From: Sminthopsis crassicaudata
Taxonomy: Eukaryota
NCBI RefSeq assembly: GCF_048593235.1
Contig: NC_133620.1
Location: 290,609,765 to 290,673,764 of the forward strand
Reading direction: 5' to 3'
DNA: 64,000 nucleotides
Shown: piece by piece, positions 5,987 to 16,232 of the stretch
Position numbering within the stretch: the first letter of the stretch is position 1
Layout: each line of letters starts with the position of its first letter
Program-made: the position numbers and the translations under genes
The notes under the pieces: model-generated
Databases searched by the model: none
What the model saw: only the letters and a program-made list of their open reading frames with translations
Told to the model about the DNA's origin: nothing

Positions 5987-8899
<2,913 letters not shown>

Positions 8900-9794
8900 C
8901 GCGATTACCTACAAAGAGAGAGACAGTGATTCCTCTGGCTCCATCTCACGAGTCTATTCCCTAGTGTGGCTGGTTTCCTAGCCCCCTACCCATGGTCCTT
9001 AGAATGCCTCTTTCAGACTCCTTCCCCGCCCCCCTTCCCCATCCCTCTCCGGGCTCTCCGATCCCTGGGAAAAGCCTCCTCAGTCTCCAGGTCTTCCGGC
9101 TTATTGTTCCCTCTGGGCCACCGTCTCGATGGTACCTGGGGGAGGATACGGGGGCTGAGAATGCAAACCGAGGCTGGGGTCTCACGGCTCCGGAATCTCC
9201 TCTCCCCTCGATTCACACAGACGAACGTGGCACTCCCGCGATCCCCGATGCTGAGAGAAGAGGAAGTTCCACCCTTTCTCCGCCCCTTTCTTTTACCCAA
9301 ACATCGGCTCTCAGCTGCAGCTACGGGGATACGCGTCCTTTGATACGCATGCGTGTGCGGAGGAAGTGAGCCAGCCGGAAAGAACGGAGCGGCCTCCTCC
9401 ACCTTGGTGAAGGGCGGAAACTAGCTCAGCGGCTTCCTGGCCACGGTGCCGCCATCTTGGTTTAGGGTAAAGAGAAGTACCTTGTTCCGCCAGATCTGGC
9501 GCCCCATCCCAAGATCTTGGCAGTCTGTTATCCTTCTCTTCCGAGCCCAGAGCTCCGTAGGTGCCTTCCCCCAAGTCCTTGCACACTTCCTTCTGGGGAC
9601 CATGCCATGGGCAGCTTTGCCCTCTCCATCGATCCTTCTCTAGCTCCCATGCCGCAGGGCAGTGTGGGCCTGTGGGGGAGCGTGACGCGAAGCATTGTGG
9701 GGCCGGGACCCGGTGGTAGCGGCGGCGGGTGGAGGTGGCGGCCGGAGAACAACAAGCCCCGGAGCCGGAGCCGGGGGAAGCGGGACGGGACGGG

Positions 9795-16232
<6,438 letters not shown>

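What the first reader, a model, noticed from the sequence alone, without database searches (positions are those of the whole stretch)
9602..9813. Long RXRB N-terminus (RXRbeta1 type) is recognisable but broken by two stops and a frameshift
Seen in sequence: ATG 9602 gives MPWAALPSPSILL* (TAG 9641-9643), homologous to human MSWAARPPFL. One frame over, 9648 onward reads [54 protein letters not shown], with TAG at 9717-9719; human has HAAGQCGPVGVRKEMHCGVASRWRRRR...[23 protein letters not shown]. The first usable in-frame ATG is 9795 (GGGATGG, good Kozak), giving 461 aa versus 533 in human. Inference: either this lineage lost about 72 aa of the A/B (AF-1) region, or the eutherian extension arose from 5'UTR/promoter sequence that is conserved because it overlaps the shared SLC39A7 promoter.
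Basis: partly seen in the sequence, partly recalled or inferred. Interest (0 to 1): 0.7.

Follow-up and report, generated by a model that had tools for sequence, protein, structure and literature searches.

The report
Dunnart RXRB cannot make long N-terminus
In this marsupial the retinoid X receptor beta gene is intact, but the upstream reading frame that placental mammals translate as an extra N-terminal tail of about 70 residues is cut by two stop codons and a one-base shift, so the protein must start at the older MGDSGR start used by birds, turtles and frogs.

Summary
ATG 9602 opens 13 codons ending at TAG 9641-9643. One frame over, 9648 onward reads the HAAGQCGPVG... piece, which ends at TAG 9717-9719. 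There is no in-frame ATG before 9795, and exon 1 ends at 9813.

Two non-human placental contigs have the uninterrupted long frame. It evolves as coding sequence there (dN/dS 0.125) and is almost invariant across all four placental superorders. One opossum protein model (UniProt F6Y1I2) also has the frame open. Against it the window shows Q to TAG, one extra base, and W to TAG. The NCBI opossum model starts at MGDSGR, as do about 60 bird, reptile, amphibian, coelacanth and lungfish RXRB models, so the short start is ancestral.

Differences between the window and placentals show no codon pattern. Even so, 9648-9779 is 82% identical to placentals, against about 52% upstream. That stretch holds the window's only two matches to a Staf/ZNF143-site-like pattern, and a turtle has three at the same place. 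I read it as promoter-proximal or leader DNA that placentals also translate.

I also could not tell whether marsupials lost the tail or never used it. The scan holds no other note on this finding.

The parts
9602..9643 (+). Remnant of the long-form start. The ATG is homologous to the placental and opossum start codon. It opens 13 codons that end at TAG 9641-9643, and would be a short upstream ORF if transcribed.
   Evidence: Searches give the sequence and translation. One search aligns the ATG with the ATG of L001 and L002, and the TAG with their CAG. One search shows that opossum P0069 has Q at this codon.
9644..9647 (+). Zone of the frame shift. The ATG-to-CAT distance is 46 nt here, 39 nt in placentals, and 45 nt as implied by the 15 opossum residues before HAAG. 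That makes one extra base relative to opossum.
   Evidence: The exact inserted base cannot be named without opossum DNA.
9648..9719 (+). Second piece of the broken frame. Its 23 codons (HAAGQCGPVG...TRW) end at TAG 9717-9719.
   Evidence: One search aligns the TAG with placental CGG. One search shows opossum W there, implying CGG to TGG to TAG.
9720..9794 (+). 25 codons in frame with the main start, containing no ATG. This is untranslated leader unless a non-AUG start is used.
9795..9813 (+). The working start codon (MGDSGR) and the end of exon 1. The donor GT is at 9814-9815, and the last base is the first base of the Asp codon completed in exon 2.
   Evidence: The same start is used by the NCBI opossum model P0180 and by non-mammalian RXRB models.
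9653..9668 (-). Staf/ZNF143-binding-site-like motif 1 (CCCACACTGCCCTGCG). It lies under the HAAGQCGP codons.
   Evidence: One search finds only 2 matches in 64 kb, where 0.01 are expected. One search finds the homologous site in L001 and L002. The published features of the site are in PMC3082894 and PMC3627581.
9686..9701 (-). Staf/ZNF143-binding-site-like motif 2 (CCCACAATGCTTCGCG). It lies under the KHCG codons, 33 nt from motif 1.
   Evidence: A turtle has three such sites at 31-nt spacing.
9607..9813 (+). An alternative frame that is open to the end of exon 1. ATG 9607 sits in GCCATGG, and there is a second ATG at 9649. It is the frame that the literature calls the RXRB ARF. It stops at TGA 10781-10783 if exon 2 follows, and is in frame with exon 3 if exon 2 is skipped.
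   Evidence: PMC1868773. Openness by chance is 8% for a given frame.
10754..11001 (+). RXRB exon 2 (A/B region), 248 nt.
   Evidence: It matches opossum P0180 at 80 of 83 positions.
11354..11510 (+). RXRB exon 3.
12008..12187 (+). RXRB exon 4 (DNA-binding domain).
   Evidence: 100% identity to opossum over 60 aa.
13452..16232 (+). RXRB exons 5-10 (hinge and ligand-binding domain). The limits are approximate, taken from local tblastn.
8198..8899 (-). First coding exon of SLC39A7, head to head with RXRB. Its ATG at 8899 lies 896 nt from ATG 9795.
   Evidence: The same arrangement is seen in opossum and turtle.

Best explanation
The stretch is the 5' part of RXRB exon 1. In this animal it is not translated as RXR-beta. 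The receptor starts at ATG 9795 (MGDSGR...), which is the ancestral vertebrate start, and the gene is otherwise intact. The placental-type long frame is recognisable from its own start codon, but three lesions disable it: TAG 9641, a +1 shift near 9644-9647, and TAG 9717. I infer that the DNA stays conserved because it works as DNA, as promoter-proximal or leader sequence of the SLC39A7/RXRB CpG-island pair. Its core carries two tandem motifs of the Staf/ZNF143-site type, and a turtle has such motifs at the same place. I take the long N-terminus to be a frame opened over this old regulatory DNA. The upstream ATG is at least as old as the marsupial-placental split. The frame came under strong protein-level selection only on the placental stem, so the marsupial frame was never protected and is broken here. 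What is shown: the lesions, the intact gene, the ancestral short start, coding selection in placentals, and the motif matches. What is inferred: that the motifs are bound, where transcription starts, and that marsupials never used the frame.
For: Lesions and homology.

Intact gene.

Short start ancestral: 68 non-mammalian RXRB hits. In the ones inspected, the alignable N-terminus starts at or very near MGDS.

Opossum annotation: the NCBI opossum model is 462 aa and starts at MGDSGR.

The placental frame is truly coding. L001 versus L002 gives dN/dS 0.125 with differences by codon position of 3:3:11. The other two frames give 2.6 and 1.4. The extension is near-invariant in aardvark, sengi, sloth, armadillo, shrew, bat, pig, cat, pika, deer mouse and lemur.

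No codon pattern in the marsupial comparison. Window versus placentals gives dN/dS 0.56-0.80, with differences of 5:10:9 and 5:10:7 by codon position. Opossum departs from the placental consensus at about 30% of residues.

Conservation starts at 9648, not at the ATG. Identity to placentals is 0.50 for the first 46 nt, the same as the 0.52 upstream, but 0.82-0.83 from 9648 on.

Motifs. The pattern CCCANNNTGCNNNGCG has 2 matches in the whole window, both here on the minus strand, against 0.01 expected. L001 and L002 each have one homologous site. The turtle has three in tandem 100-177 nt before its ATG, against 0.08 expected. The matches fit the published site description: CCCR at positions 3-6, C at position 12, and the example TTCCCATTATGCACCGCG.

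Structured RNA: none found.
Against: No reads could be laid, so the three lesions rest on the assembly plus word shares.

One opossum model (P0069, built from an older assembly by an alignment-based pipeline) keeps the frame open from the same ATG, with length differences in multiples of three. This fits an ancestral therian coding frame that was later lost.

I wrote the motif pattern after seeing the sites, so its enrichment figure is partly circular.

No binding data were found.

The overall turtle-to-therian alignment is not significant (z of 1-2).

The codon-position counts rest on about 24 differences and mix the placental stem with the marsupial branch.

The transcription start is unknown. 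If it lies upstream of 9602, the ATGs at 9602, 9607 and 9649 would burden translation from 9795.
Confidence: 0.5

Rival explanations
1. True lineage loss. The long N-terminus was a translated, selected part of RXR-beta in the therian ancestor and is still translated in opossum. Selection was relaxed in the dunnart or dasyurid lineage, and the frame then collected three disabling changes.
For: The start codon is positionally conserved in dunnart, opossum and placentals, reading M-x-W/L-A-A. The opossum model P0069 is open over about 70 codons, and its indels relative to placentals are in multiples of three. The conceptual translations of dunnart and opossum are about 90% identical. NOTCH4 decay in dasyurids, reported in another note of this scan (unchecked), shows that such losses occur in this clade.
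Against: There is no codon-like pattern in dunnart-placental differences. Opossum has about as many private residue changes as dunnart. An open 64-codon frame in DNA of 70-75% G+C is not rare: a given frame stayed open over 308 nt in 8% of shuffles, and at least one of the three frames did so in 25%. NCBI annotates opossum from MGDSGR. The first 46 nt after the ATG are no better conserved than the promoter.
Confidence: 0.3
2. Assembly or sequencing artefact. The real dunnart sequence has an uninterrupted long frame.
For: No read-level check was possible. The region is G+C-rich (0.69), and the shift lies beside a short run of C.
Against: Three separate differences within 120 nt would all have to be errors. 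Two of them are substitutions and the run of C is only three long. An independent sample (X2, study P2) holds 0.99 of the 216 sampled words of 9000-11100, and seven further studies hold most of them. That leaves room for at most about one differing site.
Confidence: 0.06
3. The stretch still encodes protein by another route. One route is the alternative frame from ATG 9607 or 9649, joined to exon 3 when exon 2 is skipped; this is the published RXRB 'ARF' idea. The other is a near-cognate start after TAG 9717, such as GTG 9735, which would keep the conserved GEQQAPEPEPGE segment.
For: The alternative frame has no stop from 9472 to the exon end. ATG 9607 sits in GCCATGG. The frame ends on a codon boundary at 9813 and exon 3 begins in phase 0. 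PMC1868773 describes exactly this for placentals. The 25 codons before 9795 are open and nearly identical to opossum.
Against: The alternative frame evolves with dN/dS 2.6 between placentals and 0.74-0.78 between dunnart and placentals, so it shows no protein-level constraint. Openness by chance is 8-25%. No RNA evidence for exon-2 skipping in this animal could be obtained. The proximal block shows only 3 synonymous against 2-3 non-synonymous codon differences.
Confidence: 0.08
4. Recoding. Two stop read-throughs and a programmed frameshift would restore the long protein.
For: None beyond the conservation of the DNA.
Against: It would need three independent recoding events. No structured RNA was found: no Rfam match and a fold z-score of +1.1.
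Confidence: 0.01

Closest known systems
Placental (eutherian) long RXR-beta, about 530-537 aa, with two possible ATG initiators (Fleischhauer et al. 1992, as cited in PMC9015987 and PMC1868773)
   Same: Same gene, same exon 1, homologous upstream ATG, and the same second ATG (MGDSGR). The nucleotide sequence is 82% identical from 9648 on.
   Different: In placentals the upstream frame is open, evolves with dN/dS 0.125 and is nearly invariant across orders. Here two stops and a shift break it.
Non-mammalian RXR-beta (kiwi, turtles, squamates, frogs, caecilians, newt, coelacanth, lungfish), about 440-455 aa
   Same: The protein begins at MGDS.. followed by [14 protein letters not shown], as in the window. 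SLC39A7 lies head to head upstream in the turtle.
   Different: These species lack the therian upstream ATG. The turtle has its own open upstream frame (ATG L003:2812), but it matches the therian frame only in part.
Opossum RXRB models: UniProt F6Y1I2 (530 aa, long) and NCBI XP_056673976.1 (462 aa, short)
   Same: The conceptual N-terminus is about 90% identical to the window's broken frame, and exon 2 is 96% identical.
   Different: The long opossum model has Q and W where the window has TAG, and one base fewer before HAAG. The opossum DNA could not be fetched.
Staf/ZNF143 binding sites (SBS) of CpG-island and bidirectional promoters (PMC3082894, PMC3627581)
   Same: CCCA at site positions 3-6, C at position 12, TGC and a 3' GCG as in the published example. 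The sites are tandem copies in a head-to-head CpG-island promoter region.
   Different: The sites were not scored with the published matrix, and no occupancy data exist for this locus. In placentals the sites lie inside translated sequence.
Dual-coding 'ARF' of RXRB exon 1 (Chung et al. 2007, PMC1868773)
   Same: The +1 frame is open in the window too, and would be in frame with exon 3 after exon-2 skipping.
   Different: No protein-level constraint is seen on that frame in my comparisons. The authors also report that the gene failed their substitution test.

Membership tests
RXRB (NR2B2) orthologue | Zinc-finger DNA-binding and ligand-binding exons collinear with a known RXRB protein | tested here: met
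   A local tblastn of opossum P0069 residues 72-530 finds all exons at 87-100% identity, apart from one 66% hit that spans an intron between two exons. Splice sites of exons 1-4 were read directly.
RXRB (NR2B2) orthologue | Conserved neighbourhood (RING1, HSD17B8, SLC39A7 upstream on the other strand; COL11A2 downstream) | tested here: met
ORFs. The SLC39A7/RXRB/large downstream gene order is seen in opossum, and Zip/RXRB in turtle.
Placental-type long RXR-beta isoform | Upstream ATG homologous to the placental start | tested here: met
   The ATG at 9602 aligns with the ATGs of L001 and L002.
Placental-type long RXR-beta isoform | Uninterrupted frame from that ATG to the MGDSGR codons | tested here: not met
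   TAG 9641, a +1 shift, and TAG 9717.
Placental-type long RXR-beta isoform | Codon-level purifying selection on the extension | tested here: inconclusive
   Clear between placentals (dN/dS 0.125). Absent in window-placental comparisons (0.56-0.80), but those rest on few differences and on mixed branches.
Staf/ZNF143 binding site (SBS) | CCCR at positions 3-6 and C at position 12 of an 18-bp site (PMC3082894) | tested here: met
   Both sites (9653-9668 and 9686-9701, minus strand) carry CCCA and the C of TGC at the right distance.
Staf/ZNF143 binding site (SBS) | Score above threshold with the published position matrix | not tested
   The matrix was not available. Only a hand-made IUPAC pattern was used.
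Staf/ZNF143 binding site (SBS) | Occupancy by ZNF143 in cells | not testable with these tools
   No supplements were held and no paper links ZNF143 with RXRB or SLC39A7 promoters.
Upstream ORF (uORF) control | The upstream AUGs lie within the mature mRNA | not testable with these tools

The most novel reading that the evidence does not exclude
The almost invariant N-terminal tail of about 72 residues in placental RXR-beta was created by opening a reading frame over much older promoter-proximal DNA. That DNA carries tandem ZNF143-type sites already present in reptiles, so the same bases now serve as codons and as factor-binding sites. Marsupials preserve the state in which the frame is unprotected. 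The dunnart would then be a natural knockout of the long isoform, showing that a mammal does well with the short receptor alone.
Probability: 0.3. Interest if true: 0.55.

Novelty: new variant of a known kind. Interest (0 to 1): 0.38.

Why it matters
RXR-beta is a partner of many nuclear receptors. Its N-terminal A/B region carries the ligand-independent activation function. The placental-specific tail is conserved more tightly than the rest of that region, yet its role is barely studied, and reviews only note that two ATGs could give N-terminal variants. A mammal whose genome cannot encode the tail gives a natural comparison for what the tail does. The locus may also be a clean example of coding sequence born from regulatory DNA. 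In practice, marsupial RXRB models should start at MGDSGR, and the long opossum model deserves a second look.

Tried and rejected
**Reads.**
No read depth, splice junctions or transcript ends could be obtained.
- All window queries stop at 9779.
- For openness: the database proteins of other species that I used as word-search queries (kiwi P0003:1-79, opossum P0069:1-150) include residues homologous to that place.

**Spliced model.**
I therefore could not look up the animal's own RXRB product or compute its length directly.

**Protein searches.**
- A word search with the exon-2 ORF found only two placental genomic ORFs.
- The large representative search with exon 2 found only those ORFs and a kiwi model.

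**Fetching DNA from other species.**
- Opossum DNA was not fetched because the file is too large.
- The kiwi, and the window's own SLC39A7 exon ORF, are not on record.
- The wombat model P0082 starts inside intron 1 and has no contig on record.
- As a result, no second marsupial DNA sequence was compared, and the three lesions cannot be dated.

**Turtle comparison.**
- The overall turtle-therian alignment is not significant. Only the motif-level match holds.

**Other explanations tested.**
- A structured-RNA explanation is rejected: no Rfam hit and no excess folding.
- The alternative frame as a selected protein is not supported.
- Splitting the stretch into distal and proximal blocks gave too few differences to say anything.

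**Literature.**
- The original papers (Nagata 1994, Fleischhauer 1992) are not held.

**Human sequence.**
- Human proteins appeared in hit lists (P0080, P0108, P0109). I did not fetch or compare them.
- L001 and L002 are unnamed Logan contigs whose N-termini differ from the primate sequences seen, so I did not take them for human.

Full report
**What is in the sequence.**
- The window carries RING1, HSD17B8 and SLC39A7 on the minus strand.
- RXRB exon 1 ends at 9813 with a GT donor at 9814-9815. Exons 2-4 lie at 10754-11001, 11354-11510 and 12008-12187 with normal splice sites.
- A local tblastn with the opossum protein finds the remaining exons up to about 16232. The gene is intact.
ATG 9602 gives MPWAALPSPSILL and then TAG 9641-9643. 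One frame over, 9648 onward gives 23 codons ending at TAG 9717-9719, followed by 25 open codons up to ATG 9795.
- The only ATGs in 9400-9779 are at 9602, 9607 and 9649. None is in the frame of 9795.

**Limits imposed on the work.**
No read-level check, splice evidence or transcript start could be obtained.
- All window queries end at 9779.
- The kiwi and opossum database proteins that I used as word-search queries contain residues homologous to that place. I state this for openness.
The 461-aa figure is therefore only shown to be consistent: the NCBI opossum model has 462 aa, and the window's exon 2 has one residue fewer.
- Indirect support for the assembly comes from word shares. 18 runs from 8 studies hold at least half of the sampled words of 9000-11100, and an independent sample holds 0.99 of them. 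This leaves room for at most about one differing site among the three lesions.

**Placental comparison.**
- Two non-human placental genomic contigs (L001, L002) align with the window from the start codon onward.
- In that alignment the window's ATG sits on their ATG, TAG1 on their CAG and TAG2 on their CGG. The window has 46 nt between the ATG and the CAT of HAAG, where they have 39 nt.
- Their long frame is uninterrupted. Between the two contigs it evolves as coding sequence: 12 synonymous against 5 non-synonymous differences, dN/dS 0.125, and differences by codon position of 3:3:11. The other two frames give 2.6 and 1.4.
- The tail is almost invariant in aardvark, sengi, sloth, armadillo, shrew, bat, pig, cat, pika, deer mouse and lemur.
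- The long form is therefore a real, strongly selected protein segment in placentals.

**Outgroups.**
- A word search seeded with a kiwi RXRB model returned 68 RXRB proteins of birds, turtles, squamates, crocodilians, frogs, caecilians, a newt, coelacanth and lungfish.
- Nearly all of those inspected begin at MGDS.. followed by DCRSPDSSS, at 440-455 aa.
- The short start is therefore ancestral.

**Marsupials.**
- UniProt F6Y1I2 (opossum, 530 aa) begins MPLAACPLSSILLQLHAAGQ..., and its frame runs open to MGDSGR.
- Against it the window shows three lesions: Q to TAG, one extra base before HAAG (15 codons plus 1 nt, against 15 codons), and W to TAG. There are also six residue changes.
- The NCBI model of the newer opossum assembly is 462 aa and starts at MGDSGR.
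- Opossum DNA could not be fetched. The wombat model starts within intron 1 and says nothing about exon 1.
- Other notes of this scan name the genome as the fat-tailed dunnart. I did not check this.

**Why the DNA is conserved although it is not coding here.**
- Window-placental differences carry no codon signature: 5:10:9 and 5:10:7 by codon position, dN/dS 0.56-0.80.
- Identity is 0.82-0.83 from 9648 on. It is only 0.50 for the 46 nt after the ATG, and 0.52 upstream of it.
- The conserved core holds two tandem motifs on the minus strand, at 9653-9668 and 9686-9701. They fit the published description of Staf/ZNF143 sites: CCCR at positions 3-6, C at position 12, and the example TTCCCATTATGCACCGCG.
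- The IUPAC pattern that I wrote from them occurs nowhere else in the 64-kb window, with 0.01 matches expected. It occurs once at the homologous place in each placental contig.
- The pattern also occurs three times in tandem, at 31-nt spacing, 100-177 nt before the RXRB start of a turtle, where SLC39A7 also lies head to head.
- The pattern was chosen after seeing the sites, so the enrichment is partly circular. The overall turtle-therian alignment is not significant.
- ZNF143 is known to act at bidirectional CpG-island promoters (PMC3082894). I found no data for this locus.
- A structured-RNA explanation finds no support.

**The alternative frame.**
- Chung et al. 2007 list RXRB exon 1 as dual-coding. 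When exon 2 (248 nt) is skipped, only a start in the +1 frame restores the receptor frame.
- In the window that frame is open from 9472 to the exon end. It has ATG 9607 in GCCATGG and ATG 9649, ends on a codon boundary at 9813, and would run into a TGA at 10781 if exon 2 is present.
- It shows no protein-level constraint. Such openness arises in 8% of shuffles for a given frame, and in 25% for any frame. I record it as a side observation.
- If transcription starts upstream of 9602, these upstream AUGs would hamper translation from 9795. Either the start site lies further downstream, or translation is regulated.

**Verdict.**
- The dunnart cannot make the placental-type long RXR-beta. Its receptor starts at the ancestral MGDSGR codons.
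- My preferred reading (0.5) is that the stretch is promoter-proximal or leader DNA, that an upstream ATG of therian age opened a frame over it, and that only placentals fixed and protected that frame.
- A true loss of a once-functional tail in the dasyurid lineage remains a serious rival (0.3). An artefact is unlikely (0.06).
- The case is a modest but tidy piece of gene evolution. As far as my searches went, it is not described in the literature.

Noticed in passing
window 9607-9813 (+): The +1 frame of exon 1 is open to the exon end. It has a strong-context ATG at 9607 (GCCATGG) that placentals lack, and a second ATG at 9649 shared with placentals. It matches the published RXRB 'ARF', and would read into exon 3 in frame if exon 2 were skipped.
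   Followed up: partly
window 9448-9460; L001 about 2767-2777; L002 about 6024-6034; L003 2462-2600: A YY1-type box (GCCGCCATCTTGG) lies between SLC39A7 and RXRB. Its orientation is opposite to the AAGATGGC(G/T)GCC of the two placental contigs. The turtle has one copy in one orientation and three near-identical repeats (GGCGCCATCTTTGTGCGGGG) in the other. The motif identity is from my own knowledge. PMC3082894 lists YY1 among factors enriched at bidirectional promoters.
   Followed up: no
L003 2812-3000: The turtle also has an upstream in-frame ATG and 63 open codons before its annotated RXRB start. This frame corresponds to the therian long frame only around the HCG codons, and to the +1 frame further upstream. 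Open upstream frames in this G+C-rich leader therefore arise repeatedly.
   Followed up: partly
window about 250-410: A run of N lies inside the RING1 exon region (ORF translations show X).
   Followed up: no
window 8198-8899 (-): The first coding exon of SLC39A7 encodes a long histidine-rich array of near-repeats ([11 protein letters not shown]-like units).
   Followed up: no
window about 15900-15990: A (TG/CA)n microsatellite lies in the RXRB intron between the last two exons. It appears as THTHTH / CVCVCV translations.
   Followed up: no
P0069, P0082 (database proteins): Both alignment-based marsupial models look imperfect. The opossum model has an extra PFS in the ligand-binding domain. 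The wombat model starts from an intronic ATG and lacks part of the hinge. Marsupial RXRB annotation is inconsistent between sources (530 aa against 462 aa for opossum).
   Followed up: partly
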